NCBI GenBank assembly: GCA_963924565.1
Contig: OZ004611.1
Span: 21,452,001 to 21,516,000 of the forward strand
Direction: 5' to 3'
Origin: Ascidiella aspersa
Lineage: Eukaryota
DNA length: 64,000 bases
Numbering within the stretch: position 1 is the stretch's first letter; each line of letters begins with the position of its first letter. Shown here piece after piece: positions 493 through 63,966 of the stretch. The notes under the pieces are model-generated. The model was given only the letters and a program-made list of their open reading frames with translations. It did no database searches and had not been told where the DNA came from. The position numbers and the translations under genes were made by a program.

Positions 493-3400
493 CGACAGCA
501 GTGGGCCAAGACAACGTCACCGAGTTGATTGTTACGTCATCGACAGTTACCGAGGTTGGTGCCCTAGGGACTGCAGACAAAACAAAATATCAAGTAAAAA
601 ATGAAAAAAAAAAAAATCAGAGAAGATAAGTGAGGTATTTTCTTTCCCGATATTTCAACATGTTTTGGTCCAATTTGGTGTGTTTTGTATTCAAATTTGC
701 CCACATAGAGTTGAACGGCTTCTTAAGCGAAATGAATACATGGGAGTCTTAAAGTTAAGTTTTCTTGCATATATACGTTTAGCCAAAACCTTCAGTACAA
801 GTTTATGCAACAGGTGGTAAAAAAATCCACATTTGTTAAAAGTTTGTTTTGATTTCAAATTTGCCCCACAGAACTTTGAATGGTTTCTTAAGCGAAATGA
901 ATACCTGTAGTCTAAAACTTAAGTTTTCTTGCATATATTTATTTAGCCAAAATCTCTGGTCAAATTTTATTCAACAAAGTAAAAAAATTAACATTTGCCA
1001 AAACGCACTGGTTTGAGCTTGATACATTGGTGAAGTGGTGCTGGTGAGACCTCCGTGACCAACTGCCTTCACGGTGAATCCGTACGTGACACCGGCCATG
1101 AGTTCGCTGGCAATTACGTAAGTCTCTGACGACACGAGTTCAGGGTAGACAACATTGTCTTTGAGTCCAATAGTTCGATATTCGATGATGTATTGAACTG
1201 CGCCTACATTTTAAAAATATTGGGAATATATTTTAGATACAAAAGAATAATATGGATAGTATTCAACTTAAGCTCACTGAACTTAATTGTGCCTTGAAAT
1301 AAAACTAAAGATTGCCATACACTCTAGTAAACGGACACTTAAAACTTTATTATCAGTACATGAGACGATAAAAATATTGAAAAAATGCTTTTCTCTAGCC
1401 GAATATCTTAAATTCTACCAAAAAATTTCAACATTCACATTTTAAACTCAATAATCACATCAATGTGTTTCCTAGAACCAATATTTAAAATTCAATGGGA
1501 GGCTATGTAAAAACAAATACTCGAGTTCCAAAGGAGTTCCGCTTTAACTTTGCCGTGAGCTCCAATGGCAACTATTTACGAATTTGTTAAATTCTTTATA
1601 TTATTTTGTAAAAATCATCCTTAGAAATACCTGCTGAGTCAATCCACTCCACAGTAAGAGATTCAGATTTGAAGGCGTGGAATTGGATTTGCCTTGGCAT
1701 ACTTGGAACTGAAATATAGAGAATACCTTAAGAAAGCTTTTAAATTATATTAATCAAAGCAGGGGAAGATCCAACTTGTGTTCAAGTTTAAAGGGCTAGT
1801 TGAAGGATTAAGTGTTGCATAATGAGCGAGTTATAGCTGTGTTTTGGCGAATGAGATCGTTTCGATAGTTTTGTCGCCAAAACGTGCGTATGTCTGTTTT
1901 AAGCCGCTACAAATATGAATCAAGTTAGGGAATTACCCTTGTTCCATAACTCAAAACAATTAACTAACAACCCATTGGTTTCAAAGAATTCAACAAGTCA
2001 TCGCGAAATACTTGATTAAAAAAGTTTAGACAAGAGTTTCACTGAAAACGAGTTTGGTGAATTTCGCGTTCATTCCCCCCCCCCAAAAAAAAAAAAATTT
2101 AAAGGGATTTTTTGCAAATTTTTTTTTAAGTTTATTAATGCCAATTTTCGCTCGGAATCAAAAAGTTTAACAATTTCAGTTGTTTAACATTAATTCAAAA
2201 TTTTCTTGCGGATAAAATATGCTGACTAAATCGAATTGTTTTATTTATAAGGTTTGTGTTTAGTAAAAGGGGCTTTAATCGATTGCGACTCAAGTTGACA
2301 AATTATAAACACACAGTTTGAATAAGTCCTTTTTGCTGTCCGAAAGCCATCGCAGACCACACGAATCTGCCGATCAATGATTTGCTAACCTGTCTTGCTT
2401 GCATCATTGATCGACAGATCAGTTGGTTTGCAATGGCGTCCGACCTACCATGATACGCAAACGGTAATAGTAGGTCACAACGCAGCTTAATCCAGAAGGG
2501 CTAGATCACAGTTGTTGATCCTACATGTGCGTGTATCTTTTGTTTATTTTTACTGATTTCAAATTGGTTCGAGTTTCCAGCTTTCGAGACGCGTACCTGT
2601 TTGTTGACGAACAGTCGCGAATTCAGTGTGGTTTACGCGTTCTTTGTCTCCGATCGAATAGACAAGGAAATTGTAAAACAGTCCGGCCTCCAATCCGCTC
2701 ACCAGAGCTCCGGTCGACGGGGTTTCCAGACTTTGCACTACAACACCCGAATCGCCGAGGGTTGCGTTGATCAAGTAAGACCTTGCGCCTGGTTAAGTAT
2801 GTAGATAGGCTTTAGTTTTGTTATTTGGTACGCGTTATTAGCGTTGCGTTGATGACGTAAGACCTTGCGCCTGGATAAATATGTAGTAATAGGCTCTATA
2901 GCTTTTTTGATACGCGTTAAACGCTCGCAAAAGTGTCAGACATTAGTTGTTTATGGAGGATTTTAAATGCCCAAATTAGATCGCTATTAAGGACAAATAT
3001 TTTGAAGATTTTCAATCAGACGGATTTAATTAAAAACATTATATAAAAAATTCTAATAAAAACACTTTTTCAGTAATGACGGATTTAAGGCCTCCGAAAA
3101 AACAAAGATTTACACTGACGAGATTTTCTTTTAGTGTGGGCTCTAAAAAAATAACTAAATCTAAAACTGGTATATAAGATCTTGCTGTCGACGATATCGT
3201 ATCTTTATTTGACCTAGCGAAATTATTACAAACAAAAAACAACGGTTCAGAATGTTGTATCCATTATATTTTTTGAATGTAATATTAAATATCTCTCTAA
3301 TGTAATATTAAATCCACTTTAGTGTACTATAGCTATTTTTCTTCTAGGTGTCGTTGCCAGATTGTCCTGAGTATTTCGCTCAAAACAACTACTTTTTTTC

Positions 3401-6400: not shown

Positions 6401-7679
6401 AGCATAACCTAAAAAGCATTGGAAAATTTAATGTTGATAAACAGTTAATGATTAACAAAAACGTTTTGACATTAACGGGCAAGTTTAGTTAATATGGCGT
6501 CAATAACAGTCCAACTAAACCCGTTGCTTTAATACTTTGAACTTGGACTACCAGTAATAACATGTGATTCATGCTGATTAAATAAACGAATTTTATAACG
6601 CATAGGTCGCTCTAGCAAAACTTTCAAATGCCTTTAGAATGTATAGGGTACTATTTTTCGAAATAATCTTTGACTTCAAGAAGTTTAGGTAATCCTAATA
6701 TAATGTAATGACTTTGTTAACAATAGGGAAACAAATCCGATAAATGTAAATCATTTTGGTAATATGTTTTCTTTAGTTTAGTTTAGTTACCATATACTTG
6801 ATTCCATGATAACGCTACGAGACTCGAAGTTACTTCGGTAGTAGCAAAATTCTCTGGTGGCCTAGGCACTGAAACAAAAAAATTAGTTACGAACAAGTTT
6901 GGGTAAAAATATAGATAAAGTGTGATCGTTAATTGGTGCATGTAACTTTATTTAACAAAAATGTTAAATCAAAATACAAGATGATATCTACATCGATAAA
7001 TATAACCAATTTGCAACCTTTTTTGGTTTTAATTGACGCCCTCAAAATGGTACCACTGATTTCAACAAATGTTGTACAACCATTTTACTTTGAAAGTAAA
7101 TTAGTTTTTACCTGCTTTATTTTATTTGAATTAGTTTTACCTGTTTGCTGTGCAACGAAAGCGTTGTCTTTTGCGTTCAGACGATTAAAGGCCCCGACAG
7201 AAAACAGGGTGAAATTGTAAACTTGGCCCGGTGTCAAATTGCCTATCGTTACGTCACTGGATGACGTATTCACTCGGTCGAACACCGTATCGGAATTCTC
7301 AAGTCTTACAACCATGACGTATCCAATGGCACCTGAGGAAAAAAACGAAACTAGATGGGTGAAAATTTGCTCAACAAAAATAATTTGCGATTATTTAGAC
7401 AAGGAAACTTTGCAGGAAAGATAAACTTTTTGTTAAGATCTACTCCTTATTCAAAATAGGCTGAAAATAATAAAGAAATCTCTTTATATCACAGTTTTTT
7501 CTTATTGCATTTTTTTTTAAGTTTTAGAGCTGTGAACAAATCCAAATCCATCTATAACTGCATTGGCAATGGATTCTGTCAACAACAGAATGTCAACAAA
7601 CCTCTGACGTCATCCCACTTCAGTTCAATAGATGACGTAGAAACAGAGACGACCCTTGGTGCTCCAGGAAACGAAGGAA
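493..7679 (-). CDS. FN3 exon block (3'-most in window): 6 domains plus a half-domain, 2-domain alternation
   Basis: Exons 493-570, 1009-1203, 1631-1708, 2597-2788, 3450-3527, 3897-4097, 4449-4526, 4818-5009, 5353-5430, 5963-6145, 6791-6868, 7141-7332, 7602-7679. Confidence 0.88.
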
Positions 7680-10600
7680 CTATGCGATACATTTGGAAAT
7701 CAATTAATGGATGCACTTTAAATGTACCTTCCAATTTAACGTGTTAGTTCAACAGCAAAAAAGTTGTGTTATTAGTTCGAACTCCGTTTTAAGTGTACCT
7801 TTTTAGTTATCTATTTACAGTAAGTTTGAAACCACTATTATCGGTTTGCATTTCAACCTTTATCACAACTGTTATATACTATAATTCACATCCTAAAATT
7901 CGCTTACAAAGTGAAACTCAGTCGTACAGTGATGAACATGCACGCCATGCCAATACAAAATCTACTATAATTAAAATAAATCACTTACCGAACAACCTAC
8001 AAATGAAAACATGCCAAGCATGTAGCATGCAGCTTGATAAAAAAAGCATTAAACCTGTAGGGATATACTTAACAATAAAAAAATGGGTTTATTTAATATA
8101 TAAAGAATTTTTTTTTAAATTGCATAAATAAACACAGTGACTATTCAAATTAGCCAACTGTGTAGATTACCGGTGATTTCTTGTATTTGTTTACTGCTTT
8201 CGCTAACTCTCATTTCCTCGCCAATGCTCCTAACGGCAAACCAATAAGCTGTACCACTCGCGAGTGACGTCACGTCTAGCGACGTCACGTTTGTGGACAC
8301 CGTGTCGGTGACGTCATCGCCGAGTGACGCGTAGTCAATCTCGTACGACGAGGCACCTGGAACATGTAAGGACTGAATCAACTTGAAAAAGCAAAGGCAA
8401 AAGAAATAGGAACAACATTCATTCGTACAAAAACAGAGAAGTACATCGTACAATCACTATAATGTTTTATAAGTTTATGATTAGTCTTGTAAGTATTTAT
8501 AAGTGTAAGTATATTGAATCCGAAAATAGGAGATGAGCTTGCAATTTAACTCGGAACATTTAGCTATCCTGCATCAAACCACGACCTATAGGGTTATCGA
8601 TATCACAGATCGAACGACATCCCCTCCATATACTCGATAGCAGCTGATGTTTTTTTATTACTCGGACGGTAGCGATTTTGCCAAAAAAATCCCGTTCCAA
8701 CAAATTTTCTACTCCACATGACAATAAAACAATTGGCTAAATAAACTATGATTAACAGTTTCTATTTACCCGAGCAGTGTTTTTTAACCGAAACGGGTTA
8801 TTTAAATATAGCCTACTTCTGAAACTACGACAGATCTTTACTGTTAGTGTACTTTTAGGAAATGTTTGCGGTTACTCAAAAACCTATACATTATTGTTCG
8901 AAAAAATTGCTATTTCGGATCAACTTATAGTTGCCTATTGTTCTAGGTGCGACCTCATATAAACAGCAATACTCAAACAAAAATTAAACCACGCTCAAAC
9001 CTGTAACAGGATTCCATCGCAATGACAGGCTGGTAGTGGAAACATTGTAAGCAACAACTCCTGATGGTGGCAAGGTAACTAAATATACAAAAACAATTAA
9101 AAAATGACGTACAAGTATAGTACCGGCAAAGAAGGTTAAACCAGGGGTCTAACACTGGGTTATGTAGACCCCCTTGAGAGTTTGGTGTACGATTAAAATG
9201 TTTAAAGGATTTTTTTAAAGAAAAGAGTAAATAAACTCTTTGGCGCCTTCTTATATTAAGACTTCATTTCAGTTTAACTTTTATTGAAACAAAAACAGCC
9301 AGTTTCTTAAGTCTACTTATTTCATGGCGTCAATTTATGTCGTCATTTCCACAAAATCCCGTGCTGACTCTGATCCACGCCGAACAAAAAATATTTAAGG
9401 TGGACTGCTAAAAAAAAGTTTGAAAACCCCTGGGTTACACAATCATTTTACACAAAGGTTTAATTTTGAGTAATGAACCAGGATATATCCAAAAATTATT
9501 TAAACAAACTATACAATCTTGATTTATTTCTAAGTTAATTAATTAATTGTTTTCATGCAATTTAAAAAAGATTAGCGTACTTTGTGTCTGTAAAAATGTT
9601 ATTTTTATCCAAAAAAAAAAGATTTTAAAATATATATAAAAAGGTTCTTTGCCAGATATATTATATCGATTCTTTCTATCGAACACCTCGTGAGAATTAA
9701 ATTAGAAATAAAAATTTCACCTGTTTGCAATGTCAGTAAATCTGAGCCCTTCTCGTTTCGCCGTCCCTTGATTCCGATTGAGAAAACGACGAATTCATAC
9801 CACGTGCCCGGCTCTAAGCCAATCACAGTCGTCCGCGTGTCATTGCCTTCTAGGGTCGACCAATTAAAATCGCTTCCACGGACGCGGTAAAGCAACTGAT
9901 AGCTCTGCGCACCTAAATGAAATAAATATTATTTTATTTGGAATGTCTTGACGATAATTCATGCGACCCGTCATAAAGCAGTTATACGAAAAGTTGTGCA
10001 TTTTGTCAAAAAAAAATTACCTGTAACCGGTTGCCATTCCAAGGTGCTTGAATTAGTTGTGACGTCAGCTATTTGCAATCCAGACGTAGTTGCGGGACCT
10101 TCGCGAAATAAATAACATTACACTAAATTGAAAACTGCATTGGACTATACGACATTCAGACGTAAAAATGCTGTTGAGTCAATATTCACTTGTTGTATAG
10201 TTATTAGTAATATTATACTTAAAACTTATGAATATCACGAATGGACTCACGAGTTGTTTCACGAGCTACGTGACTCGCCCTGCTAAGACCTCCGCCGGTA
10301 CCGACTGTTTGCAGGGTGAAAATGTAGCTGGTGCCAGATTGAAGCCCGTCGACTGTTAGTGACGTCATGTTCGTGCGCTGTACAGTTTGGACATGGTCCT
10401 GGCCCAGCGGATACAATGAGACAACGTAAGAAGCAGCTCCTGTAAAACAATAAAGTAAAAATGAATAGGATGTTTTGGGGTAAAAGTGTCACTGTGAGCT
10501 ATTGGGATGACCATATGAGATATATTGTCCTTGTTAATTTGCACATATTATTTAACGAACTTACGCAAGAACGACAGCGTACCCTTAAAAAAAGTAAAAA

Positions 10601-55600: not shown

Positions 55601-58600
55601 GTACCATGGTATGATACAGCACGTAAACTTAATTTTTCGCGCTTCGCCAAAACAAATGGGGCCGAGATTTAGGCTACTTGCATATAAGGCCGAGATTAAC
55701 TTGCATATTTGCGCGCGAGTGAACTCTCGAAGAGCGGGTGTTCGTAAGTTGATTTGTTTTATGACGTCACGATATGGCGTAAATTATGACGTCACCCCTT
55801 TAATTCGACAGGTTTTGCGGCCCATCGACATTTTTAAAGTGGCAATGCGGCCCATTCTGCTGAAAGGTTGGACATCCCTGGTTTAAGCAATAGTTACATT
55901 TTTACCAAATTTAAAAAACAAATTTTACTTCGGTTGTAGAACGCATGGAAAAATAAACCAACCTTTGACCCCGTTCCAGGTGAACCTCATTGACGAAGTG
56001 GTGACGTCACTTATTACTGTTCCATCCGGAGCGAGAGGAACTGTGACGTACATGACACGGGTTAATATGGATAAATGACGTCAGGTTATAAAATAAAATC
56101 AAATGTAAGGTTTAAAAAATTACACAACATTTAAATTTTTGTTAATTGTACAACAACATCCAAAGTCACCATTACTATTTGCAAAATTTATTATTTTAGT
56201 TATACAACACAGTCAAAGTCACGCTAACTAGTTTCTGAAGTTTTTTTTTTATATTTGTTAGATTCCAATGACGTCGTTTATAATAAGTAAAGTCTAACAA
56301 ACAATCACAGCTTTAAAAATATTTATAGGGTCGAGTTTTTATGTTGTACCAAACTGCCTCATTGAAGTTTCTAAATGCATTTTCGTCCAAACCATTTAAC
56401 CACCAAATAAAAGTGAACAAAAACCGACCTGTTTGAAGTTGTATCTTGTCGCTCCCTCTCTCGTTTCTCCGATCCTTGATTCCGACAGAGAAGACGACAA
56501 ACTCGTACCACGTGCCCGGCTCTAAGCCAATCACGTTTGCTTCTGGCGCTAAGGTGTTAACCACGCGTGGCTCTTCCGTCGTTTCGTTGTTCCGGTAATA
56601 CACCTGGTACTTTTGAGCACCTGCCAATCAAAACAGTTAACGTTATTCACTGTTAAAACTCTAGTCTATGCACTTGTGTGCAACAAGCTGATGCACATTA
56701 TTAGTGGCTTCTATAAGGTAAGTTAACAACATTAAGGCATTTGCTTCTGATAGCTCAAAGACAAAAAAATTATAAAAAAAAGGTTTTCCATGTATATATT
56801 TTTATATAACTACCAAGGGATATTATACGCATTTTATTTGAAATGCTTAAAACTTATTTTTATCTATATTTTACTTCCACGTTATTATCCTACAAGTAGA
56901 ACTTTTACATACATTGTCAGTTCAAAAGTATATGTGACACCAATTTACTCAATAACCCTAATATAATGTGAAATTGTGAATACTTCTAATCTTCTACCTG
57001 TTACTGGCTGCCATGACAACGATGCCGAGTTGATGGTGACGTCAGTTACGTCCACGCCGGATGTTCGAGCGGGTCCTGTCATTTATACGAAATACAAAAT
57101 AAGGCAAACAGAGAACGAAAGTTTGGTTCCACTCGTGAATTTAAGTACCCTTTCAAAAAGTACCTATAAAAGTATTCTATGGTAAAGATCTGAGGTTTTG
57201 CCAACTCCAAACTCAGTATATACAGTAGTTGGCTGAGGGTGGTGTATTTAAATATTTTAATGGCAGTTTCTTTTTAATAATTTTACTTCTATTATAACCC
57301 AAATTTTTGTTTAATAAACAAATGTGCACTTAAAAAGGTTAAATAGGACAATTTAAGTTTTATAACGTTATTTGGATGATGACGAATTTTTTTTTCACTT
57401 CACCAAACGAAAAACACTGGTAACTTAAAATAAATATTAAATAAACCTTTGAGTGCTATCATGTGAACGTATATAATCACGAAAATGTCAGGGAACTCAC
57501 GAGTGGCGTCACGAATCTCACGGCTCACGGCACTCTTTGCATCTCTGCCGACCGTCCTCAAAACAATGACGTAATTGGTTCCCGGCTGGAGACCCGTTAC
57601 TCTGTAGGAGGGCGCCTGTGACGTCGCCGGGACGTTGAAAATACCGATGATGTCACCCGTTGATGACGTAACGTCCACTTCGTAGGACTCGGCACCTGAA
57701 TGAAGAGTAAGCTTAAGGACGGGTAAAAAGTCTAATGACATTTTCGAAATTAATAGATAAAAATTTTACACGGTTAAAAAACGCAAATTTTGCAAAGGTT
57801 TTAAATATTACCACACACTTACGGTTTTTATTAAAATTTTAATATATGTTTTTTTCCCGGATAGCATTTACCACCTTAATAATGTTCTAATTAATTCATC
57901 ATTTTTTAGGGACCTTAGAAGCAAAGCTCCAAACCAGTAAAGTATAATTGCGCTAAACAGCCAACCCAAAACACTTTTTATTTTTTTTTATCGTTTCAGC
58001 GGGAAATTTTCTCGCTATACTGACCGGTAATTCTTCTCCAACTCAGGCGAATCGAGTTGATCGTGACTTCGTTGACGTCGATTTGGCTGGGAGGGTTTGG
58101 AACTGAACAAAAAGAGAAATAATTTGTTACACCAAAAGTTTTAAAATTGAAAAAATGTCGTAAATTTATGAACAACGGTAGTTGTATTGCGCAATGTCGT
58201 GAAGGTGTTGGCACAAACGAAGCCGGAATAAGGGTTCCTTCTAAATCTAAAGCTAGACCAGCGGTTCTCAACCAGTGGGCCATAGCTCACTGGTGGGCCA
58301 TAAGAACATTTGAGGTGGGCCACAGACCAATTTAAAAACGCTAGATTTAGTTTCATATATTTAATTTTACAGGAATAATGGCTTGGGGAGAAATTAAAAA
58401 GGAATGTAAATTTATTGTTCAGCCACAAGTATCTCACTAATGCACGGTTAAATAAATAATCTGTTTTGAAATATTTTCTGCTGTGTTTTGTTTTTTTCCT
58501 TCATAAAACTATTGGGCCGCAGAATTTTTTTTGCAACGTGGGCACTGAGCTAGACGATATGGAAATCAATATACATTTAAACCTAATTAATTATTAAATA

Positions 58601-61600
58601 GACAACCTATGCACTTTTAGCCAACCTACTTAAAATAATGTTGTTTAGCCTTTTTTCGTTCAATATTGAAAAACAGACACAAATAAAAAATAAAAAAAAA
58701 ACAGACACAAAATAAATAAAAAAACCGTAAAACTCATCAAATCTATGCTAATAAATCCTCAACAATAACAGAATAAAGAGTAACTAATATCTAAAAAGCA
58801 TCAGTTTATTTATCTTTTATACTTTGGGAAAAACATTTAACGGCGGATGACAAGTTAAACCTTGGTTTCTTCATATCAATCATTTGAACACTCCTCACCT
58901 GTCTGGATATTGACGACCAACGACTCGTCGGCATTGGTAACGTCAAGGTCACCGATAGAGGTCAACCTAAACTCGTAATAATTTCCTGGTCTCAAACCAG
59001 TCGCAGTCTGCGTGAGCAGGCCTGTTTCGAGACTAGTGGTGGTGGCATCGTTCACGTTCAAAACGGTTAGTCGGTATCTCGAAGCACCTTAAACATGTAA
59101 AAGTATACATCTTGAGCAATAATGGTTACTGGTTAGTAAACTATTCAGTTTTAAGGGCCAATACGTGATTATATTGTCAAATAAATGTAAATATATATTG
59201 TATAGATAGATGATCTTAAGACTATTTATAGAAAACAGGTTTAAAACATAAAATCTTTTAGAAATATATATTTCGCCTTATAAATAGCCATCGTTAGTTT
59301 CTGTCCAAAATGCTAACATTTTGGCATTTTATACATGTCTATTTCAAAGGTGAAATATATATATTTCTGTAAAGTTTTAAGAAATGGTTTTATGTTTTAT
59401 ACCTGTTTTCATAAACAGTCTTAAGATCATCTGATACGAAATCAAGAATCTTTCTTTTACATTTTATTGTCTGCGGGAGATTCCTTACTTCCTTAAGTGA
59501 CTCAGCTTATATTTTGTATAGCGTATAAAATAACCGCCATTGATTTGTGAAGGGGGATTACCTGTAGCTTGTGGCCAGCTGATTGTAACTTCTGTTGTCG
59601 TAACCGAATCGACGTCCCAACTTGTGACCGCATTAGGCACTGTAAGACGAAATAAAAGTTTGCAGACAAGGCTATGGTGCCGTGGCTAAAAAAAGTAAGC
59701 GGGAAATCGTATTTTTACAAGTTTACAATTTAGGTAAAACATGTATAGAATTTAGGTAAAAACACCTTAAAGAATCGTAAACACCTGACAAGAGGCACGA
59801 AACGATGTAATTAGAATTTAAATATGCAAAATATAGTTAAAAATCATTTACATAAGGAGAGCTACCATTGTTTATGAAAAAATTACGTTTATATTCTTTA
59901 ACTGGTTTGTGATTGGTAACAGAAATAATTTCAATATAGTTTCTAAAGCTAGATAACACTATACTGGTTGATAAGAATCAACTTACATGTTGCCCTGATA
60001 ACTTGGGCGCTTTCCCCGCTACTGAACACACCCTCCTCTCCGAACGAGCGAACCGTGAAGCGGTACTCCGTTCCCGGTTGCAGTGACGTAACTTGGTGTG
60101 ACGTGCCCTCCACCGTGACGTCATCGACCTCCACCTCGGCGCCGGAGTCGACGCGCAGAACGCGCACTTTGTAGAAACTGGAACCTGGCGAGCAACAAGC
60201 AACGGAGATTAGCAATTGAACAGGTTGACTAACAAACATAAAATTAAGAACTACAATAGGATATAATGATGATAAAAAAGGTTATGTTCATAAAAACAAA
60301 TAAAACAACATAAAATTATTTTCTAAATTTTCATAGAAATATATGTTTCGTCTATAAGGCATCGTCAGTTTTTGTACAAAAAGCAAATATGTAAAAATGC
60401 CAATAATAGTAGACTACTATGGTAGACATGTTTGCTTTTTGTACAGAAACTGACGATGCCTTATAGGGGAAATATATGTTTCTGTAAAATTTTAAGAAAT
60501 GATTTTATGTTTTACCTGTTTTTGTAAACAGTTTAAGACTATCTGATACGAAAACAAGAATCTTTCTTTTACATTTTAGTGTCTGCGGGAGATTCCTTAC
60601 TACCTAAAGTGTTTCAGCTTACAATAGAATATAAAAATTCGATGAAATCCATACGACTCTCTGTTTTTCCGACAACCACTCATCAAGCGGGTATAATTGT
60701 TTATAAAAAATAAAAACCCGTTTTGGGACGTCATTTCGGACCCATAAAGTATTTATTTTGTCCAGTTTTTCTCTATAGCATACTGTTATACATCACATTT
60801 ACCGGTGCCCATTGTAGTGTGCCTCTATAATAAAAAAATTAAAATTTTAAGTCTTTAATCTACCCTTTTTTTGTTTACTTTGATACGATATTCGGTTGAC
60901 GTACTTTGACGCTTAGTTTTGTGAACCATTAGCTTTTCACAAACAAACATTTGGGTAGTTGGGGTTTTCCCTTAATAATGTCTGTAACGGGGAAAATTTA
61001 AAACACGAAGACCATGCTAATGACCATTTTGAGTTTAGAAACACAATAACATTTACAGGGTAGCCTTTATCGTACCGTAAACGGCATCCCACGAAATTCT
61101 CGCGCTGGTGGTTGTGACGTCATCGGCATTGACGTTTTCCGGTGTAGAAGTAACTGAAAAGTAATTCAGCAAAGTTTGTTATAAAAGCTTCGGTTGTCAT
61201 ATCTAAAAAAGGCTTGGATATTAAATAAACCATAAGTGTAAAGGTTTACATCACAAAGTTACGTTTTATAAAAAAGAAAACATTTAGGATAGTAACGACA
61301 AAGGATAAAATTGTGAAATAATGTACGTACAATACCTATAGGATTCATTCATAATAAAAAATTGAATAATTCACTATTAGCAAGGCAAATATATTCTTTG
61401 TTTTATATCTCTAAAAAAAACGCTTTTACATCGCCCAAAGTGACAAACTTAAAGTGACTAAAGTAACTATACTATGCCATAAGATGTTGCACTGAATATC
61501 TCGACCTCAATTCCTAATCAGTAACAGCGGAAAAGTCTAGCCAAGCTTCCAATTCAGATCAGAAACTATTAAAAGTATAATCACATAGATTTTAAGATCT

Positions 61601-63966
61601 TTTAGCAGTGTCTGACCTCATTTCCTAGCTTTACTAAACTATTATGTTGCTATACCAGAACAGTCTAAAGAAAATTTCGATTAAAAGGACATACTGGTTT
61701 GAACTTGTAGCGGAAGACTCCCGAGATTGTTACGCGCGTCTTTCACACCGATTGAGTACACGACGAAAGTGTAAACACCCCCCGGTCGCAGATCGGTGGC
61801 CCCCACTTGGCTGACGTCACTGGAGAGGGTCAGCTGATTCTCGAGCTCGGGACTCTCCATTGTGATGTCATAGCGGACAGCACCTGGGTTTTACATATTT
61901 AATTGTCAAACTCTTTAATTGCAAATATTTATAAGAAAAAAATATAAAAAAAAGTTCTTCAAGCAAAACAGCTGTTCATTTTGTTTAAATATTCAAACTA
62001 ATTAAAAATAAATAAAAAAGCAACATCTGTAAAATTTCAACGTAAAACACCCAATTCGAAATGAACATTCGTTTTCATTTAAAGTTTACTTTATCTAAAT
62101 TGTTCGAAAAGAATGTGCGTGTCTAGTTCAAGCATTTATATTTTGTACGTCATTGCATCAACATGAAATTCGACACACTAAGTTTTTTCTCACCATGAAC
62201 CACCTTCCATCCGATTCTCACGCTGGTCGTCGTAGTTTCCAAAACAGAAGGTTGCGGTGGACTATCCGGCACTATTGAAGATATACACAGATGTGATGTT
62301 ATAACTCAAATCTTAACTCATGGCATTAAGAGTGGTTAGAATGGCAACTACTAAACGCTAAAATGTGGTCTTGAATAAAATCGTGTACACATTTTTTGCG
62401 TAAATGGGAAAAGATAGAAAAAACGTCTCGTTGTCTAACGTGAAAATGCACCTAGACATAACAAAATACTACAACTGCAGTATCAATGAAACCTGAACAC
62501 ACATATGTGTGTTTACAACTGAAATCTAGCCCTTCTGAAGCTACTTTTTGACCAACGATTACGGCTTACATATCATTAGTATACCGAAAGCCATTGCAGA
62601 CTCTTCACCGAATCTGTCGATCAATGATGCAAGCAGGGCAGACTAGAAAAACAACTAGCTGCAGTGAGGTTCGAACTCACGACCTCCGGTCAAGCCGGGA
62701 CCGTCGCTATACCAACTAAACTATGTAGGCTCAGAAGGGAACGAGTCGAGAAACAACCATACGCCAATGCTTGCTCAATCTGTTAGTACAAGCAACTTCA
62801 AAAGTAGTTGCACATTCGGTAAAGAGTCTGCAATGGCTTTCGGTATACTGCAGTATCACCTTTTTATTTCTCGAATTGAAATCGTTGGTTCCACGGTGAC
62901 TTGAATGAATTTCGATATTGAAAACGAAACATGTTCTTACATGCCTTAATCTAAAGTAAAACCATACTTTCTCCAAATTACAACCCCCTTAAACTTTGAT
63001 GTCTATCAATCTCATATATATAAAAAATGCCGCATAAGTTTAATATTCGACTTACGCGTTGACTCCGTGATGACGACATTTTCGTCGCTTTCCCGGCCCT
63101 CCTGAATTCCCACCGATTTCATTCGGATGACGTAAGAGGTCCCGGGTCGCAGTGACGTCACAATCAGGGACTTGCCGGTCGTGGTAAGCTGCAATTCGTC
63201 ACTCGTGGAACCGTCTTCATTTTGGAAAGTGACGTCGCTCTCGGGTGAGGTGACGCGGAACGCGTAGTGTGACGTACCTAACAAGATGCAGTTGGGATTA
63301 AAACAAAAAATACAATAATTTTATTAAAATTCAAAATAAGTTGTTTACTACAAACATTAGACCCGTTTATAAGTAAAGAAAATGGCAAATATACCCGAAT
63401 CCGGAAAGAATAAACCCTTTTTAATCACACACAGTTCAACTGTCTGTGCCTTGATTTTTTGGGACGCACAAACAATTTTTTTCGGAGAAGACGTTACAAA
63501 AATGTGACATAACCTGACGTCATAAAACAAGTAATTGAAACCCTCTGTGCCCGGTGTAACTTGCGCGCACATATTTAACTGAAATTAATAATGAAATAGA
63601 GTCTATTGATTCGCTAAACTCGAAAATATGTTGCGTTATCCGGTTTAAGTTGGCATCTTTTCACCCTTGGTAAAGGGGTTACTTGTATAACGCCGGGTTT
63701 AAGATAAAAAAAACTTTAATCACCCCTGAAAATTGGTGGCGATCTTATTCACATAATAACCACTGGTCTGCCTGTTTTGACACTGAAAGCACAACAATGC
63801 TAATACCGTGCGACAAATTTTATACAATTTTTTTGGTCATTTTTTTAGTGTAGGAATAACTGACATGTTGCTGAGAAGTTCAACATACCGTAAGAACGCT
63901 TCCACTGAAATCCAATAGCGCTTGTCGTAATGTTGTCCACTTTGATCTGTGTTGCTTCTTTGGGAA
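493..63966 (-). CDS. Internal part of a giant multi-exon gene encoding ~63 tandem fibronectin type III domains (extracellular; receptor-PTP-ectodomain/fibronectin/tenascin-like architecture); both ends outside window
   Basis: About 118 exons with GT..AG boundaries, all phase 1-1 and all multiples of 3. A exons (78 bp) read like VPxxPxNLxVxxVTTxSxxLxWxxVxG. B exons read like GAxxYxV...GLxPGTxYxFxVxSVG...SxxxxxxT. These carry the FN3 hallmarks (B-strand Trp, C-strand Tyr, tyrosine corner LxPGTxY). The minus-strand ORF-track hits (e.g. 19534-20004, 22981-23358, 56313-56627) are these exons extended into introns. No other domain type seen. Confidence 0.93.
690..1000. repeat. Intronic tandem duplication, ~165-bp unit x2
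   Basis: TTCAAATTTGCCC...CTTAAGCGAAATGAATAC...TTAAGTTTTCTTGCATATAT...TTTAGCCAAAA occurs at ~690 and ~855. Confidence 0.8.
2338..2540 (+). mobile_element. 5'-truncated/inverted copy of the SINE-like family
   Basis: Shares CTTGCATCATTGATCGACAGAT and AGAAGGGCTAGATCACAGTTGTT, preceded by an inverted segment CCGAAAGCCATCGCAGAC. Confidence 0.6.
2761..2920. repeat. 82-bp tandem duplication spanning a splice acceptor
   Basis: GTTGCGTTGAT...GTAAGACCTTGCGCCTGG.TAA.TATGTAG occurs at 2761 and 2843. Confidence 0.8.
5571..5672. mobile_element. Foldback element with two inverted hammerhead-like motifs (Penelope-like pLTR remnant)
   Basis: Arms GTTATGAGATAGATATATTTCGTTCCTAAAAGCTTCATCGG and CTGATGATGCTTTTAGGAGCGAAATATATTTATCATATAAC are imperfect reverse complements. 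The plus arm has CTGATGA (5632)...GAAA (5652). Stem I is weak. Confidence 0.6.
8171..16767 (-). CDS. FN3 8-domain super-repeat copy (a-h), 3' copy
   Basis: Exons 8171-8356, 9001-9078, 9721-9912, 10021-10098, 10251-10439, 10782-10859, 11224-11412, 11883-11960, 12434-12625, 13147-13224, 13572-13760, 14473-14550, 15085-15270, 15761-15838, 15965-16147, plus the A part of fused exon 16690-16953. Confidence 0.88.
9142..9432. mobile_element. hAT-type MITE
   Basis: Termini CAGGGGT...ACCCCTG; 8-bp TSD GGTTAAAC/GGTTACAC. Confidence 0.7.
12740..13083. mobile_element. Degenerate DNA-transposon remnant with CGATAC/GTATCG subterminal repeats
   Basis: Clusters of CCGATAC/GTATCGG at both ends; right end TCGGACATCCCTA. 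Confidence 0.45.
14128..14362 (+). mobile_element. tRNA-derived SINE-like element
   Basis: Pol III box A TAGCTCAGTTGG (14172) and box B GTTCGAACC (14218). Body CTGCTTGCATCATT..ATCGAC..GATGGCTTTCGG..AAGGGCTAGA.. is shared with other copies. Confidence 0.75.
14842..15050. repeat. Intronic tandem duplication, ~120-bp unit x2
   Basis: GGATAATTTT.TAAAAGCATGTTT.TTGTAGAAATA.CCACAATC.AATTAGA...CATACGACCTA occurs at 14842 and 14962. Confidence 0.8.
16690..25298 (-). CDS. Four tandem copies of a 4-domain FN3 unit (a,f,g,h) with fused exons
   Basis: Exons 16690-16953 (B+A fused), 17470-17547, 17622-17813, 18218-18295, 18367-18555, 18877-18954, 19020-19202, 19647-19988 (A+B+A), 20210-20401, 20478-20555, 20629-20817, 20940-21017, 21083-21265, 21331-21672 (ABA), 21766-21957, 22026-22103, 22322-22510, 22609-22686, 22758-22940, 23004-23345 (ABA), 23487-23678, 23748-23825, 24274-24462, 24562-24639, 24711-24893, 24957-25298 (ABA). 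Confidence 0.9.
17093..17453. mobile_element. hAT-type MITE
   Basis: TIR CAGGGGTTCTTA...TAAGAACCCCTG; perfect 8-bp TSD GATTAAAC. Confidence 0.85.
19366..19468. mobile_element. Small TTAA-flanked MITE (Kolobok-like termini)
   Basis: TTAA-AGGTGGA...TCCACCT-TTAA. Related single ends at ~13463 and ~37424. Confidence 0.55.
21766..25639. repeat. Recent tandem segmental duplication (~1.7-1.95 kb unit) including introns
   Basis: Introns 22941-23003 vs 24894-24956 and 23346-23486 vs 25299-25447 are nearly identical, and exons 23004-23345 vs 24957-25298 differ at few sites. Confidence 0.9.
24009..24227. mobile_element. hAT-type MITE
   Basis: TIR CAGGGGTTCCCAACC...GGTTGGAAACCCCTG; TSD TTGTAAAT/CTTTAAAT; absent from the paralogous intron near 22285. 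Confidence 0.8.
25448..31874 (-). CDS. FN3 8-domain super-repeat copy, middle (its h domain lies in exon 24957-25298)
   Basis: Exons 25448-25639, 25780-25857, 25939-26124, 26276-26353, 26815-27003, 27316-27393, 27782-27979, 28113-28190, 28466-28654, 29264-29341, 30435-30623, 31016-31093, 31531-31713, 31797-31874. Confidence 0.88.
29510..29700. mobile_element. Foldback element with inverted hammerhead pair, interrupted on the right by a hAT MITE
   Basis: TTTCGCCTACTGGCATCGTCAGTTCC (29549-29574) is inverted relative to GGAACTGAAGATGCCAGTGTAGGCAAAA (29666-29693). Same family as the 59.2 and 60.3 kb copies. Confidence 0.6.
29538..29575 (-). ncRNA. Minimal hammerhead ribozyme motif, intronic, sense to host pre-mRNA
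   Basis: Minus strand reads GGGAA-CTGACGA-T-GCC-AGTA-GGC-GAAA-TAT-ATA-TTTCT. Intact core, stem II GCC/GGC, palindromic ATATAT, AUA triplet, stem I with GU wobbles. Confidence 0.65.
29710..30208. mobile_element. hAT-type MITE with internal GGAGCC/GGAGCT hexamer arrays
   Basis: Perfect 15-bp TIR CAGGGCTGGGGAGCC...GGCTCCCCAGCCCTG; perfect TSD CTTAAAAC; internal ~39-bp tandem units. Confidence 0.88.
32469..40951 (-). CDS. FN3 8-domain super-repeat copy, 5' copy
   Basis: Exons 32469-32657, 32805-32882, 33349-33540, 33610-33687, 34436-34624, 35156-35233, 35763-35951, 36537-36614, 36977-37165, 37777-37854, 38010-38198, 39066-39143, 39370-39561, 39663-39740, 40205-40390, 40874-40951. Confidence 0.88.
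33821..34463. repeat. Local duplication of exon 3' end, donor site and intron
   Basis: 33821-34126 is similar to 34226-34463, including AACTCACTCGTCGTTTCAAA. Confidence 0.8.
34858..34957 (-). mobile_element. tRNA-derived SINE-like fragment
   Basis: Minus strand GTAGCTCAGTCAGTAAAGCGACAGTCCC...GAGGTCATGCGTTCGAAC. Confidence 0.65.
35547..35590 (+). ncRNA. Minimal type I hammerhead ribozyme motif (Penelope/retrozyme type), intronic, antisense to host gene
   Basis: AACC-CTGATGA-AG(tcagctggtatctgctg)CT-GAAA-C-GTC-GGTT. Intact CUGANGA and GAAA cores, stem I AACC/GGTT, stem II AG..CT and CAGC/GCTG, palindromic ACGT in place of stem III, GUC cleavage triplet ending at 35586. Confidence 0.75.
37200..37395 (-). 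mobile_element. tRNA-derived SINE-like copy (extra tail fragment at ~37476-37525)
   Basis: AGGTTCGAACTCATGACCTCCGGTCA box-B region; GAAAGCCATCGCA body. Confidence 0.7.
39901..40054. mobile_element. MITE with 25-bp TIRs and ~9-bp TSD (Mutator-like)
   Basis: GGCGCTGGGCTAGAATCCTACCACA...TGTGGTAGGATTCTAGACCAGCGCC; flanks TAACAAAAA/CAACAAAAA. Confidence 0.7.
41710..41935. mobile_element. hAT-type MITE
   Basis: CAGTGGTTCTCAACC...GGATGAAAATCACTG; perfect TSD CTGTAAGG. Same family as 54264-54538. Confidence 0.82.
42073..43295. mobile_element. Non-autonomous hAT (Charlie-like) element, ~1.2 kb
   Basis: TIR CAGGGGTTACCAACC...GGTTGGGAACCACTG; perfect TSD CTCTAGAG (NTCTAGAN target typical of Charlie hATs). 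No intact transposase. Confidence 0.82.
44449..54027 (-). CDS. FN3 exon block, 10 more divergent domains
   Basis: Exons 44449-44634, 44997-45074, 45635-45823, 46011-46088, 46554-46748, 47393-47470, 48061-48240, 48885-48962, 49461-49655, 49781-49858, 50080-50265, 50645-50722, 51112-51312, 51697-51774, 52455-52646, 52866-52940 (75 bp), 53214-53396, 53478-53555, 53658-53849, 53950-54027. Confidence 0.88.
46821..47282. mobile_element. Degenerate hAT-type MITE
   Basis: CAGAGGTTCTCAACC...AGTTGAGAACCATTG; TSD eroded. Confidence 0.55.
52052..52217. mobile_element. Small MITE with ~20-bp TIRs
   Basis: CTGCGTTTCAATTTATATA...TGTATAAATTGAAACGCAG. Confidence 0.6.
54264..54538. mobile_element. hAT-type MITE
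   Basis: CAGAAATTCTCAACC...GGTTGAGAACCACCG; perfect TSD AGTTATAG. Confidence 0.8.
54586..63966 (-). CDS. FN3 exon block (5'-most in window), 7 domains including d,e,f,g,h-type domains
   Basis: Exons 54586-54771, 55963-56040, 56429-56620, 56998-57075, 57501-57695, 58025-58102, 58899-59087, 59562-59639, 59987-60184, 61076-61153, 61695-61883, 62194-62271, 63056-63277 (222 bp), 63889-63966. Confidence 0.88.
55293..55880. mobile_element. hAT-type MITE (young)
   Basis: Perfect 15-bp TIR CAGGGATGTCCAACC...GGTTGGACATCCCTG; perfect TSD GTTTAAGC; subterminal GCGGCCC repeats. Confidence 0.9.
58259..58575. mobile_element. Degenerate hAT-type MITE
   Basis: Left TIR CAGCGGTTCTCAACC and GTGGGCC subterminal repeats; right end eroded. 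Confidence 0.5.
59208..59510. mobile_element. Foldback element, degenerate inverted hammerhead pair plus shared 3' tail
   Basis: Long inverted arms AGATGATCTTAAGACTATTTATAGAAAACAGGT...ACCTGTTTTCATAAACAGTCTTAAGATCATCT. The tail TGATACGAAA..AAGAATCTTTCTTTTACATTTTA.TGTCTGCGGGAGATTCCTTACT is shared with 60544-60620. Confidence 0.65.
60300..60621. mobile_element. Foldback element with inverted hammerhead pair plus shared tail
   Basis: Arms TTTCGTCTATAAGGCATCGTCAGTTTTTGTACAAAAAGCAAATATGT and ACATGTTTGCTTTTTGTACAGAAACTGACGATGCCTTATAGGGGAAATATATGTTTCTG. CTGACGA at 60450, stem I CAGAAA/TTTCTG. Confidence 0.7.
62490..62848 (-). mobile_element. tRNA-derived SINE-like copy with inverted duplication at its 5' side
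   Basis: GGTTCGAACTCACGACCTCCGGTCAAGCCGGGACCGTCGC; ~34-bp inverted repeat at 62579-62612 / 62815-62848. Confidence 0.75.

What the first reader, a model, noticed from the sequence alone, without database searches (positions are those of the whole stretch)
493..63966. Giant extracellular protein made of at least 63 uninterrupted FN3 domains
Seen: ~118 exons encoding only FN3 half-domains across 64 kb with no start or stop, essentially Cys-free, with dense NxS/T sequons (e.g. NQTMFNVTTNMTS, NITTS, NGTD). Known: vertebrate fibronectin has ~15-17 FN3, PTPRB/PTPRQ ~17-18 and tenascin-X ~32, so 63+ exceeds these familiar extracellular arrays. Inference: a lineage-specific rod-like secreted or receptor protein over 200 nm long (e.g. 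tunic/ECM filament, hair-cell-link-like tether, or R3-PTP with hugely expanded ectodomain).
Basis: partly seen in the sequence, partly recalled or inferred. Interest (0 to 1): 0.75.

Follow-up and report, generated by a model that had tools for sequence, protein, structure and literature searches.

The report
Giant secreted fibronectin-repeat gene, sea squirt
This window is the middle of one very large sea-squirt gene that encodes a secreted, sugar-coated rod of about 95 fibronectin type III beads, roughly twice as many as in its unstudied counterparts in other sea squirts.

Summary
On the minus strand the window holds exactly 118 exons. All have AG/GT borders, all have lengths divisible by three, all introns are phase 1, and there is no stop codon. 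They encode 63 complete FN3 domains plus half of another, 5,649 codons in all, with no cysteine and 102 N-x-S/T sequons.

With the flanks it is one gene of about 131.5 kb (G000:C5:21,420,850-21,552,330). Its order is signal peptide, RRRR site, VWA domain, at least 94 FN3 domains, an RKKR site with a helical spacer, then the last FN3 domains and a stop. No transmembrane segment or phosphatase domain was found, so the receptor-phosphatase reading fails and the secreted-rod reading stands.

It is not an orphan. Uncharacterised proteins of Clavelina, Phallusia and Ciona share both ends collinearly, with 59, 51 and 38 FN3 domains. This genome added about 46 domains by amplifying blocks of 8 and 4 domains. 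dN/dS of 0.1-0.5 between copies argues for a working gene.

One RNA-seq run gave no exonic reads, so transcript continuity and function remain inferred.

The scan had already noted the 5' part of this gene in the neighbouring window (s1-787271).

The parts
493..63966 (-). Central part of one giant gene: 118 exons encoding 63 complete FN3 domains plus the N-half of a 64th. All introns are phase 1.
63889..63966 (-). First (most 5') exon in the window: an A-type (N-half) exon of 78 nt. 58 of the 59 free-standing A exons are 78 nt and one is 75 nt.
52455..63966 (-). FN3 domains 15-24 of the gene, which map one to one onto Phallusia domains 17-26. This part is not expanded.
56429..56620 (-). C-half exon of the 'original' alpha-type FN3 domain (= Phallusia domain 22), carrying the conserved motif GIKDRRNE.
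40952..44448 (-). Longest intron (3,497 nt). No FN3 exon was found in it and its open frames have no Pfam match.
32469..40951 (-). 8-domain super-repeat, copy 1 (domains 32-39; order gamma, epsilon, zeta, eta, theta, delta, alpha, beta).
25027..31874 (-). 8-domain super-repeat, copy 2 (domains 40-47). Borders are approximate.
16760..25026 (-). Four tandem 4-domain units (gamma, delta, alpha, beta; domains 48-63). The two youngest units are 92-98% identical in protein over the C-half exons. Borders are approximate.
8171..16759 (-). 8-domain super-repeat, copy 3, more diverged (domains 64-71).
24957..25298 (-). Fused exon (N-half + C-half of a beta domain + N-half of the next domain; two introns absent). 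The same form occurs at 23004-23345, 21331-21672 and 19647-19988. At 16690-16953 only one intron is absent.
33349..33540 (-). Alpha-type C-half exon. It and the copies at 25448-25639, 23487-23678, 21766-21957, 20210-20401 and 17622-17813 are 92-96% identical in DNA, although their flanking introns do not align.
9721..9912 (-). Diverged alpha-type C-half exon (GIKGRRNE).
493..570 (-). Last (most 3') exon in the window: an A-type exon. Its C-half partner lies in the downstream flank (locus L007).

Best explanation
The window is the middle of a single intact gene on the minus strand (G000:C5:21,420,850-21,552,330, about 131.5 kb). The genome is an ascidian's, to judge from the best-matching proteins.

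Its order is:
- signal peptide;
- a short propeptide ending in RRRR;
- one VWA domain that lacks the full DxSxS metal-site motif;
- an unbroken, linker-free, cysteine-free string of about 90 FN3 domains;
- an RKKR site followed by a helical spacer of about 100 residues;
- the last FN3 domains, then the stop.

Shown here: the gene structure, the domain content, the orthology with uncharacterised ascidian proteins, purifying selection on duplicated exons, and how the array grew. A block of eight FN3 domains was duplicated in tandem. A four-domain sub-block was then amplified four more times. This multiplied a strongly conserved domain ('alpha', motif GIKDRRNE) from one copy in the other ascidians to nine here.

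Inferred: the protein works outside the cell as a long, flexible, N-glycan-coated rod or tether of more than 300 nm. The VWA domain would act as the anchoring or assembly end. The FN3 string would act as an extensible spacer that displays repeated alpha/beta modules. Proprotein convertases would trim it at the conserved basic sites near both ends.
For: Exon structure: 118 of 118 window exons have AG/GT borders and lengths divisible by 3, with no stop. In the flanks, 31 of 37 HMM hits have splice sites at the predicted place.

Gene ends: the ATG lies at C5:21552330, followed by a hydrophobic signal sequence and RRRR. The phase-1 donor of exon 1 fits the phase-1 acceptor of the VWA exon. The TAA stop lies at C5:21420850-52, with AATAAA/ATTAAA signals downstream. 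Pfam VWA matches two exons at E = 1e-5 and 1e-3.

Domain count: 94 hits cover the C-half of an FN3 profile at E <= 0.01. All 152 profile hits are on the minus strand.

Orthology: the profile search of 1.84 billion proteins put Clavelina XP_076820779.1 (5,778 aa), Phallusia CAB3265300.1 (5,021 aa) and Ciona XP_078481437.1 (3,607 aa) at ranks 1, 2 and 4. tblastn of the Phallusia N-terminal 900 aa and C-terminal 1,500 aa is collinear with the locus. Of the 150 listed hits, VWA similarity is seen in two of these (Clavelina, Phallusia) and spacer similarity in all three, and in no other. The spacer exon occurs once in this genome. 73 of 75 B-type exon matches in the genome lie in this locus.

Secreted, not membrane-bound: the orthologues have no hydrophobic segment beyond the signal peptide. 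The Ciona orthologue has only FN3-type Pfam families. No PF00102 match was listed on C5.

Selection: dN/dS is 0.1-0.5 in nearly all paralogous exon comparisons. For gamma and delta copies dS is near or beyond saturation in all but the youngest pair. Of 9 exonic polymorphisms seen in other DNA runs, 5 are synonymous and 4 are not.

Growth of the array: domain similarity peaks at lags 4, 8, 12 and 16, and the order of domain classes shows the blocks. Our domains 1-9, 11-24 and 83-90 map in order onto Phallusia domains 3-11, 13-26 and 39-48; only domain 86 (to 39) breaks the order. The 58 domains in between face only 12 in Phallusia. The alpha motif is conserved in Phallusia and Clavelina, where KDRR occurs once in each protein.
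Against: No transcript evidence. In the one RNA-seq run available for this species, with about 6% of its reads sampled, only 7 reads were laid on window:48001-54000. All 7 fitted only partly. They lay where the DNA contigs pile up, which marks intronic repeats, and none lay on an exon. The tissue and stage of that run are unknown to me.

Because every exon is symmetric (phase 1-1), any subset could be skipped in frame. Real products may therefore be shorter. Clavelina has listed isoforms of 5,603 to 6,305 aa.

The spacer model is weak (mean pLDDT 57).

The flank exons were not all modelled, so the total length and the count of about 97 FN3 domains are estimates.

Function is pure inference. 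No paper on any orthologue was found.
Confidence: 0.72

Rival explanations
1. The array is real DNA but is not expressed as one 28-kb message. Many exons would be cassette exons or silent relics, and the proteins actually made would be much shorter, or the gene would be on its way to decay.
For: No exonic RNA reads in the one run laid. All 118 exons are phase 1-1, so skipping keeps the frame. Clavelina has isoforms that differ by up to about 700 residues.
Against: There is no stop, frameshift or lost splice site in 118 of 118 exons. dN/dS is well below 1 even for old duplicates whose dS is near or beyond saturation. Skipping a single half-domain exon would break an FN3 fold. The polymorphisms sampled lean synonymous (5 of 9).
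Confidence: 0.2
2. Receptor-type tyrosine phosphatase of the R3 group (PTPRB/PTPRJ/PTPRQ-like) with a hugely expanded ectodomain, as the automatic name of the Phallusia protein suggests.
For: Databases call the Phallusia orthologue 'receptor-type tyrosine-protein phosphatase eta-like'. There are weak Pfam matches to Dep-1 FN3 models. Many vertebrate hits of the profile search are named RPTP beta-like.
Against: The coding sequence ends in a stop directly after the last FN3 domain, collinear with the ends of three orthologues. The orthologues have no transmembrane-like segment. The Pfam lists of the orthologues do not include PF00102. No PF00102 match was listed on C5.
Confidence: 0.02
3. The copy number is inflated by an assembly artefact in the repeated part of the gene.
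For: Two neighbouring 4-domain units (about 25.0-23.1 kb and 23.1-21.4 kb) are 92-98% identical in protein and 93-99% in flanking intron DNA.
Against: Only that one pair is near-identical. All other units differ strongly: gamma and delta copies have pS 0.53-0.85, near or beyond saturation, and their introns do not align. Assemblers do not invent such copies. Contigs from two other DNA runs lie on 48-54 kb at 95% or more identity, with some depth in 29 and 30 of 30 bins.
Confidence: 0.05
4. A member of a named vertebrate-type matrix family: a tenascin, or a VWA+FN3 collagen (types XII, XIV, VII) or WARP.
For: VWA followed by FN3 domains is the N-terminal logic of FACIT collagens and WARP (recalled). 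Databases name many hits of the profile search 'tenascin-X-like'.
Against: There is no cysteine at all in the window's coding sequence, so no EGF repeats. No EGF, fibrinogen or collagen family appears in the Pfam results for the orthologues (which accession belongs to which family is partly recalled). The true tunicate tenascins are other proteins (Ciona XP_018668975, Phallusia CAB3267154; passages of PMC11401434).
Confidence: 0.03

Closest known systems
Uncharacterised ascidian proteins: Clavelina lepadiformis LOC143466065 (XP_076820779.1), Phallusia mammillata CAB3265300.1 ('RPTP eta-like') and Ciona intestinalis LOC100178140 (XP_078481437.1)
   Same: Clavelina and Phallusia share the signal peptide, the basic site, the VWA start, the FN3 string, the basic site with helical spacer, and the terminal FN3 domains and stop. 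The Ciona model starts inside the FN3 string and has the spacer without the basic site. The Phallusia protein is collinear at both ends, and the alpha-domain motif is shared with Phallusia and Clavelina.
   Different: They have 59, 51 and 38 FN3 domains by the same profile, against at least 94 here. They show only a two-domain alternation and no 4- or 8-domain period. KDRR occurs once in the Phallusia and Clavelina proteins, against nine alpha-type domains here, six with KDRR. None of the three has been studied, as far as my searches show.
R3 receptor tyrosine phosphatases (PTPRB, PTPRJ/DEP-1, PTPRQ)
   Same: A similar subtype of FN3 domain and a purely FN3 extracellular part.
   Different: This gene has no transmembrane segment and no phosphatase domain. 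It has an N-terminal VWA domain and about five times as many FN3 domains.
Tenascins, especially tenascin-X, and the 'tenascin-X-like' or 'titin-like' predicted giants of frogs, fishes and lamprey
   Same: Long runs of the same FN3 subtype. Predicted frog proteins show 75-84 matched stretches in about 7,300 aa.
   Different: None of those hits shares the VWA or the spacer. This gene has no EGF repeats or fibrinogen globe. Tunicates have a separate bona fide tenascin.
FACIT collagens XII/XIV, collagen VII and WARP (VWA1)
   Same: Secreted matrix proteins that combine VWA and FN3 domains (recalled).
   Different: No collagen helix or thrombospondin-type domain was seen. There is one VWA domain only, and the FN3 number is 5 to 50 times higher.
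Hemicentin and titin (analogies only)
   Same: Hemicentin has an N-terminal VWA domain followed by a very long unbroken string of one domain type (recalled). Titin has domain super-repeats (recalled). This genome's own titin-like gene lies on C9.
   Different: Hemicentin uses Ig domains and has EGF and fibulin ends. Titin is intracellular and mixes Ig with FN3. There is no homology beyond the FN3 fold.

Membership tests
Pfam fn3 (PF00041) domain array | Match to the fn3 profile above the curated cut-off | tested here: met
   The intron-less copies score 37.9-43.7 bits against a cut-off of 25. Half-domain exons match the expected halves of the profile below the cut-off. The Ciona orthologue scores 633 bits with 27 matched stretches.
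Ascidian VWA-FN3 giant protein orthogroup (Clavelina LOC143466065, Phallusia CAB3265300, Ciona LOC100178140) | N-terminus: signal peptide, basic cleavage-type site, then a VWA domain | tested here: met
   The site reads RRRR here, RRKR in Phallusia and RSKR in Clavelina. VWA exons match at E = 1e-5 and 1e-3.
Ascidian VWA-FN3 giant protein orthogroup | C-terminus: basic site, helical spacer, terminal FN3 domains, stop | tested here: met
   Collinear tblastn matches down to the stop. The spacer alignment is 54%, 44% and 30% identical to Phallusia, Clavelina and Ciona. The Ciona protein lacks the basic site.
Ascidian VWA-FN3 giant protein orthogroup | One-to-one order of FN3 domains, and a single copy in the genome | tested here: met
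   Domains 1-9, 11-24 and 83-90 map in order (one exception, domain 86) onto Phallusia 3-11, 13-26 and 39-48. The spacer exon occurs once in the genome.
R3 receptor tyrosine phosphatase | Single transmembrane helix followed by a PTP catalytic domain (PF00102) | tested here: not met
   Stop after the last FN3 domain. No hydrophobic segment in the orthologues. No PF00102 in the Pfam results or among the listed genome matches on C5 (150 of 491 candidates scored).
Tenascin | Cysteine-containing assembly region, EGF-like repeats and a C-terminal fibrinogen-related domain | tested here: not met
   0 Cys in the window's 5,649 codons and 6-8 Cys in the whole orthologues. Only FN3-type and VWA families appear in the Pfam results. 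The tunicate tenascins are other accessions.
FACIT collagen, collagen VII, WARP | Collagen triple-helix (Gly-X-Y) segment; for WARP, only two FN3 domains | tested here: not met
   No collagen family appears in the Pfam results of the orthologues. The C-terminal exons of this locus are FN3 or have no Pfam match. I did not scan every flank exon.
VWA domain with a metal-ion site (MIDAS) | DxSxS motif at the start of the domain | tested here: not met
   The sequence here reads D-N-S-R-L, and Phallusia has E-T-S-R-L. That the motif is DxSxS is recalled.

The most novel reading that the evidence does not exclude
The protein is a molecular ruler or filament of an ascidian-specific extracellular structure, for example the pharyngeal mucus filter net or the link between tunic and epidermis. 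The number of FN3 beads would set a physical dimension, and the repeated, exon-wise homogenised alpha module (GIKDRRNE) would be a multivalent binding or cleavage site. The lineage-specific doubling from about 51-59 to about 95 domains would then be an adaptive change of mesh or tether length. The mesh size of such nets is comparable to a rod of about 0.3 micrometre as far as I recall. Nothing here tests this idea.
Probability: 0.08. Interest if true: 0.8.

Novelty: new variant of a known kind. Interest (0 to 1): 0.5.

Why it matters
If it is made as one chain, this would be one of the longest secreted proteins and the longest unbroken FN3 string that I could find. The largest predicted rivals in the 1.84-billion-protein search had 75-84 matched stretches.

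The gene belongs to a conserved but wholly unstudied ascidian family whose database names ('RPTP eta-like', 'titin-like') are misleading.

The locus is also a clean natural example of how giant modular genes grow. It shows uniform phase-1 exons, amplification of 8- and 4-domain blocks, stepwise intron loss in the youngest copies, and one exon type kept 92-96% identical in DNA while its introns drift.

For tunicate biology it is a candidate structural protein worth localising. For protein mechanics it is a cysteine-free rod of about 95 beads.

Tried and rejected
Receptor phosphatase: rejected.

Tenascin or collagen membership: rejected.

CUB-like fragment: it lies about 6.5 kb downstream of the stop (L010:2177-2320, Pfam CUB E = 1e-3). 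I considered it as a further exon and rejected it, because the orthologues end where this gene stops and the fragment's motif is split between two reading frames.

Spacer domain: no Pfam match and no usable ESM Atlas hit. The AlphaFold model was too weak (pLDDT 57) to justify a fold search, so none was run.

Word-based homologue searches with the C-terminal regions of the Clavelina and Phallusia proteins found only Clavelina isoforms, or the query itself. They say nothing about other species. Candidates were also limited to 0.55-1.75 times the query length.

Literature: 0 papers for 'LOC100178140' and 0 for ascidian + fibronectin type III + von Willebrand + giant. The searches on Ciona matrisome, FNDC7 and tunicate ECM gave nothing on this gene; for those I saw listings and abstract starts only. 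Of PMC11401434 I saw passages only. Supplementary files were not opened and might hold expression tables that include the Ciona or Phallusia orthologue.

RNA support was sought and not found.

Open frames inside introns (7 tested) have no Pfam match.

All searches were made exon by exon, with alignments of single exons, or with database proteins. The total protein length is therefore an estimate.
Full report
WHAT IS THERE. The window has 34-39% G+C and no N. Six-frame reading shows FN3 half-domain motifs on the minus strand only. There were 37 N-half and 56 C-half regex matches on minus and none on plus.

I built two HMMs from these matches. 'A' is the N-half, of the form xPxxPxxVxVxDVTTTSxxLxWxxVxG. 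'B' is the C-half, of the form GAxSYxVxV...LxPGTxYxFxVxSVG...QT. They gave 57 A and 63 B hits in the window, all on the minus strand.

The DNA around the hits shows a fixed plan. Each FN3 domain is split into a 78-nt A exon and a 180-222-nt B exon. Every intron, between domains and within them, is phase 1. AG and GT lie at or within 6 nt of the predicted place for 110 of the 120 hits. The other 10 hits belong to five fused exons that have lost one or two introns.

Six A exons that the HMM missed were recovered as 78-nt AG..GT exons. A seventh missing A part lies inside the fused exon 21331-21672.

The tally is 118 exons. All 118 have AG/GT borders and lengths divisible by 3, and none has a stop. 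They hold 16,947 coding bases (5,649 codons), no cysteine and 102 N-x-S/T sequons. Composition alone predicts about 65 sequons (my arithmetic from the residue counts).

Pfam fn3 matches the intron-less copies at E = 3e-11 to 2e-9.

THE WHOLE GENE. The window is G000:C5:21452001-21516000 in an assembly of 308.6 Mb. I fetched 60 kb on each side.

B-type exons continue for about 20 kb upstream and about 23 kb downstream, which gives 90 in all. A full-domain FN3 profile, trained on the orthologues, finds 94 hits that cover the C-half at E <= 0.01. All 152 hits of that profile are on the minus strand. About three more diverged domains are visible by collinearity.

Upstream lies an exon that starts with ATG at C5:21552330 and encodes MRSHFFVVVVATALLHAAHAQ...RRRR. 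Its phase-1 donor fits a phase-1 acceptor in front of VWA exons (Pfam VWA E = 1e-5 and 1e-3).

Downstream the FN3 domains become more diverged. Then comes an exon with RKKR and a non-FN3 stretch, then further FN3 exons, and a TAA at C5:21420850-52 with polyadenylation-type signals after it. The next 20 kb downstream hold nothing that belongs to the gene.

The flank exons follow the same splice plan: 31 of 37 hits have sites at the predicted place. The rest are fused or diverged exons.

I built no spliced model. From the window's 5,649 codons for 63.5 domains, I estimate roughly 9,000 residues in total.

RELATIVES. A profile of 58 single B exons (alignment A1) was run against 1.84 billion proteins. 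It gave 17,364 hits at E <= 0.001.
- Rank 1 is Clavelina lepadiformis 'uncharacterized protein LOC143466065' (5,778 aa, 56 matched stretches).
- Rank 2 is Phallusia mammillata 'receptor-type tyrosine-protein phosphatase eta-like' (5,021 aa, 46 stretches).
- Rank 4 is Ciona intestinalis LOC100178140 (3,607 aa, 36 stretches).
- The other high ranks are predicted vertebrate and amphioxus giants named tenascin-X-like, titin-like, RPTP beta-like or fndc7rs1. They have up to 84 stretches in about 7,300 aa.

Arrays of 50-84 FN3 domains of this subtype are therefore common in predicted chordate proteomes. Among the 150 listed hits, VWA similarity is seen only in the Clavelina and Phallusia proteins. 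Spacer similarity is seen only in the three ascidian proteins.

The Clavelina and Phallusia termini match this locus in plain reading. tblastn of the Phallusia N-terminal 900 aa and C-terminal 1,500 aa is collinear with the locus at 42-79% identity.

By the same FN3 profile the orthologues have 59, 51 and 38 domains. They have no hydrophobic segment beyond the signal peptide and only 6-8 cysteines. The Ciona protein has only FN3-type Pfam families. The precomputed Pfam lists of the Clavelina and Phallusia proteins add VWA (PF00092) but no PF00102.

The spacer exon occurs once in this genome. 73 of 75 B-type matches in the genome lie in this locus.

The genome is thus an ascidian's. On the spacer it is closer to Phallusia (54% identity) than to Clavelina (44%) or Ciona (30%).

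HOW THE ARRAY GREW. Mean identity between the C-halves of domains i and i+k peaks at k = 4, 8, 12 and 16, at 0.41, 0.41, 0.38 and 0.36 against about 0.30 for odd lags.

Clustering gives the following order of domain classes:
- [gamma epsilon zeta eta theta delta alpha beta] twice (domains 32-47);
- [gamma delta alpha beta] four times (domains 48-63);
- one more diverged 8-block (domains 64-71).

Against Phallusia, our domains 1-9, 11-24 and 83-90 map in order onto its domains 3-11, 13-26 and 39-48; only domain 86 (to 39) breaks the order. The 58 domains in between face only 12 in Phallusia. Its domains 22 and 23 (our alpha and beta) come up again eight and seven times.

The orthologues show only an even/odd alternation and no 4- or 8-domain period. 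The amplification is therefore specific to this lineage and added about 46 domains.

Apart from the youngest pair of units, gamma and delta copies differ at pS 0.53 or more, at or beyond saturation, with dN/dS of 0.1-0.5. The copies have therefore been kept as coding sequence for a long time. Only one pair of units is young (dS about 0.1).

Of 40 polymorphisms listed from contigs of two other DNA runs, 9 are exonic: 5 synonymous and 4 not.

THE ALPHA DOMAIN. Six alpha-type C-half exons are 92-96% identical in DNA (dS 0.05-0.28). Their flanking introns do not align, and the neighbouring exons of the same units are 64-77% identical.

The motif PGTWYxFxVFxIGIKDRRNE is conserved in Phallusia domain 22 and Clavelina domain 24. 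KDRR occurs once in each of those proteins. Here there are nine alpha-type domains: eight in the clustering class, plus domain 20. Six of them carry KDRR.

This points to exon-limited gene conversion, to constraint on the DNA or RNA itself, or to both. It marks alpha as the likeliest functional module. KDRR fits the minimal basic-x-basic-R pattern of convertase sites (recalled). It lies late in the domain, shortly before its last strand, so cleavage there is only a possibility.

There is no RGD, KGD or RGE in the window's exons, and four LDV.

EXPRESSION. One RNA-seq run of the same species label was available. About 6% of it (1.18 billion letters) was read and laid on window:48001-54000. Only 7 reads were laid, and all fitted only partly. 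They lay where the DNA contigs pile up 5- to 100-fold, which marks intronic repeats. None lay on the 14 exons of that stretch.

I do not know the tissue or stage of that run. This shows no more than silence or very low expression in that sample. Contigs of the two DNA runs lie on the stretch at 95% or more identity, with some depth in 29 and 30 of 30 bins.

MECHANISM. Shown: the product is a secreted, cysteine-free, sequon-rich string of FN3 domains. It has one VWA domain at the front and conserved basic sites after the signal peptide and before a C-terminal spacer. The AlphaFold model of that spacer shows three long helices but has low confidence (mean pLDDT 57).

Inferred: the product is an extracellular rod or tether of more than 300 nm, with three parts to its action. 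The VWA domain would act as an anchoring or assembly end; it lacks the full DxSxS metal-site motif (the motif is recalled). The FN3 string would act as an extensible, glycan-shielded spacer that displays repeated alpha/beta modules. Convertases would process it at both ends. Which structure it belongs to is unknown.

KNOWN OR NEW. It is not a receptor phosphatase, a tenascin or a collagen (see the membership tests). Tunicates have a separate tenascin (passages of PMC11401434). It is an orthologue of predicted, unstudied ascidian proteins.

No paper was found on them (where I saw listings only).

I rate it as a new variant of a known kind, namely modular FN3 matrix proteins. What is unusual is its architecture, its size and the clarity of its growth history.

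The neighbouring window's note s1-787271 had already described the VWA end of the same gene, and I confirmed that here independently. Note s1-794507, on stepwise intron loss at 16690-25298, agrees with the fused exons that I found.

Noticed in passing
window 33349-33540, 25448-25639, 23487-23678, 21766-21957, 20210-20401, 17622-17813 (minus): One exon type (the alpha C-half) is 92-96% identical in DNA among six copies, with dS of 0.05-0.28. Its flanking introns do not align, and neighbouring exons of the same repeat units have pS near or beyond saturation. This suggests exon-limited gene conversion or constraint at the nucleotide level.
   Followed up: partly
window 16690-25298 (minus): Precise intron loss graded by copy age. 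Older beta-type domains (at 54.6, 32.5 and 8.2 kb) keep both introns. The copy at 16690-16953 lacks one. The four copies at 19647-19988, 21331-21672, 23004-23345 and 24957-25298 lack both. This agrees with the scan's note s1-794507.
   Followed up: partly
window 62656-62730 (minus): A tRNA-Ala(GGC)-like sequence inside an intron, on the same strand as the gene (Rfam tRNA 35.7 bits; ARAGORN). It could be a tRNA gene or a tRNA-derived repeat.
   Followed up: no
window, whole: At Rfam gathering thresholds no hammerhead ribozyme family matched anywhere in the window. Other first-stage notes (s1-794431, s1-794432, s1-794508) report minimal hammerheads in introns of this gene. I ran no permissive scan, so this neither confirms nor refutes them.
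   Followed up: no
window 51400-51600 and 52400-52600: Short intronic stretches where contig depth in two DNA runs jumps from about 50-100 to 560-9,200, and where the few RNA reads partly fit. These are high-copy repeats that are transcribed somewhere in the genome.
   Followed up: no
G000:C9:7590003-7613776 (loci L013-L015, plus strand): Open frames of 4,921 and 2,540 residues made of alternating FN3 and Ig-like domains, ending in a protein-kinase domain. This is the genome's titin-like gene with giant exons. It is ordinary and unrelated to this finding beyond the FN3 fold.
   Followed up: partly
G000:C6:29.0-32.6 Mb, C6:7.2-7.3 Mb, C8:8.2-8.5 Mb and C8:24.2-24.5 Mb: Dozens of tyrosine-phosphatase (PF00102) exon matches in dense clusters, which suggests large tandem arrays of PTP-domain genes.
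   Followed up: no
L010:2158-2370 (C5:21414158-21414370, minus): A CUB-domain-like fragment about 6.5 kb downstream of the gene's stop. Its motif is split between two reading frames, so it is a probable relic or part of another gene.
   Followed up: partly
G000:C6:3935877-3938610 (plus): The only two B-type FN3 exon matches outside the locus at E <= 1e-8, so a second, much smaller gene carries the same FN3 subtype.
   Followed up: no
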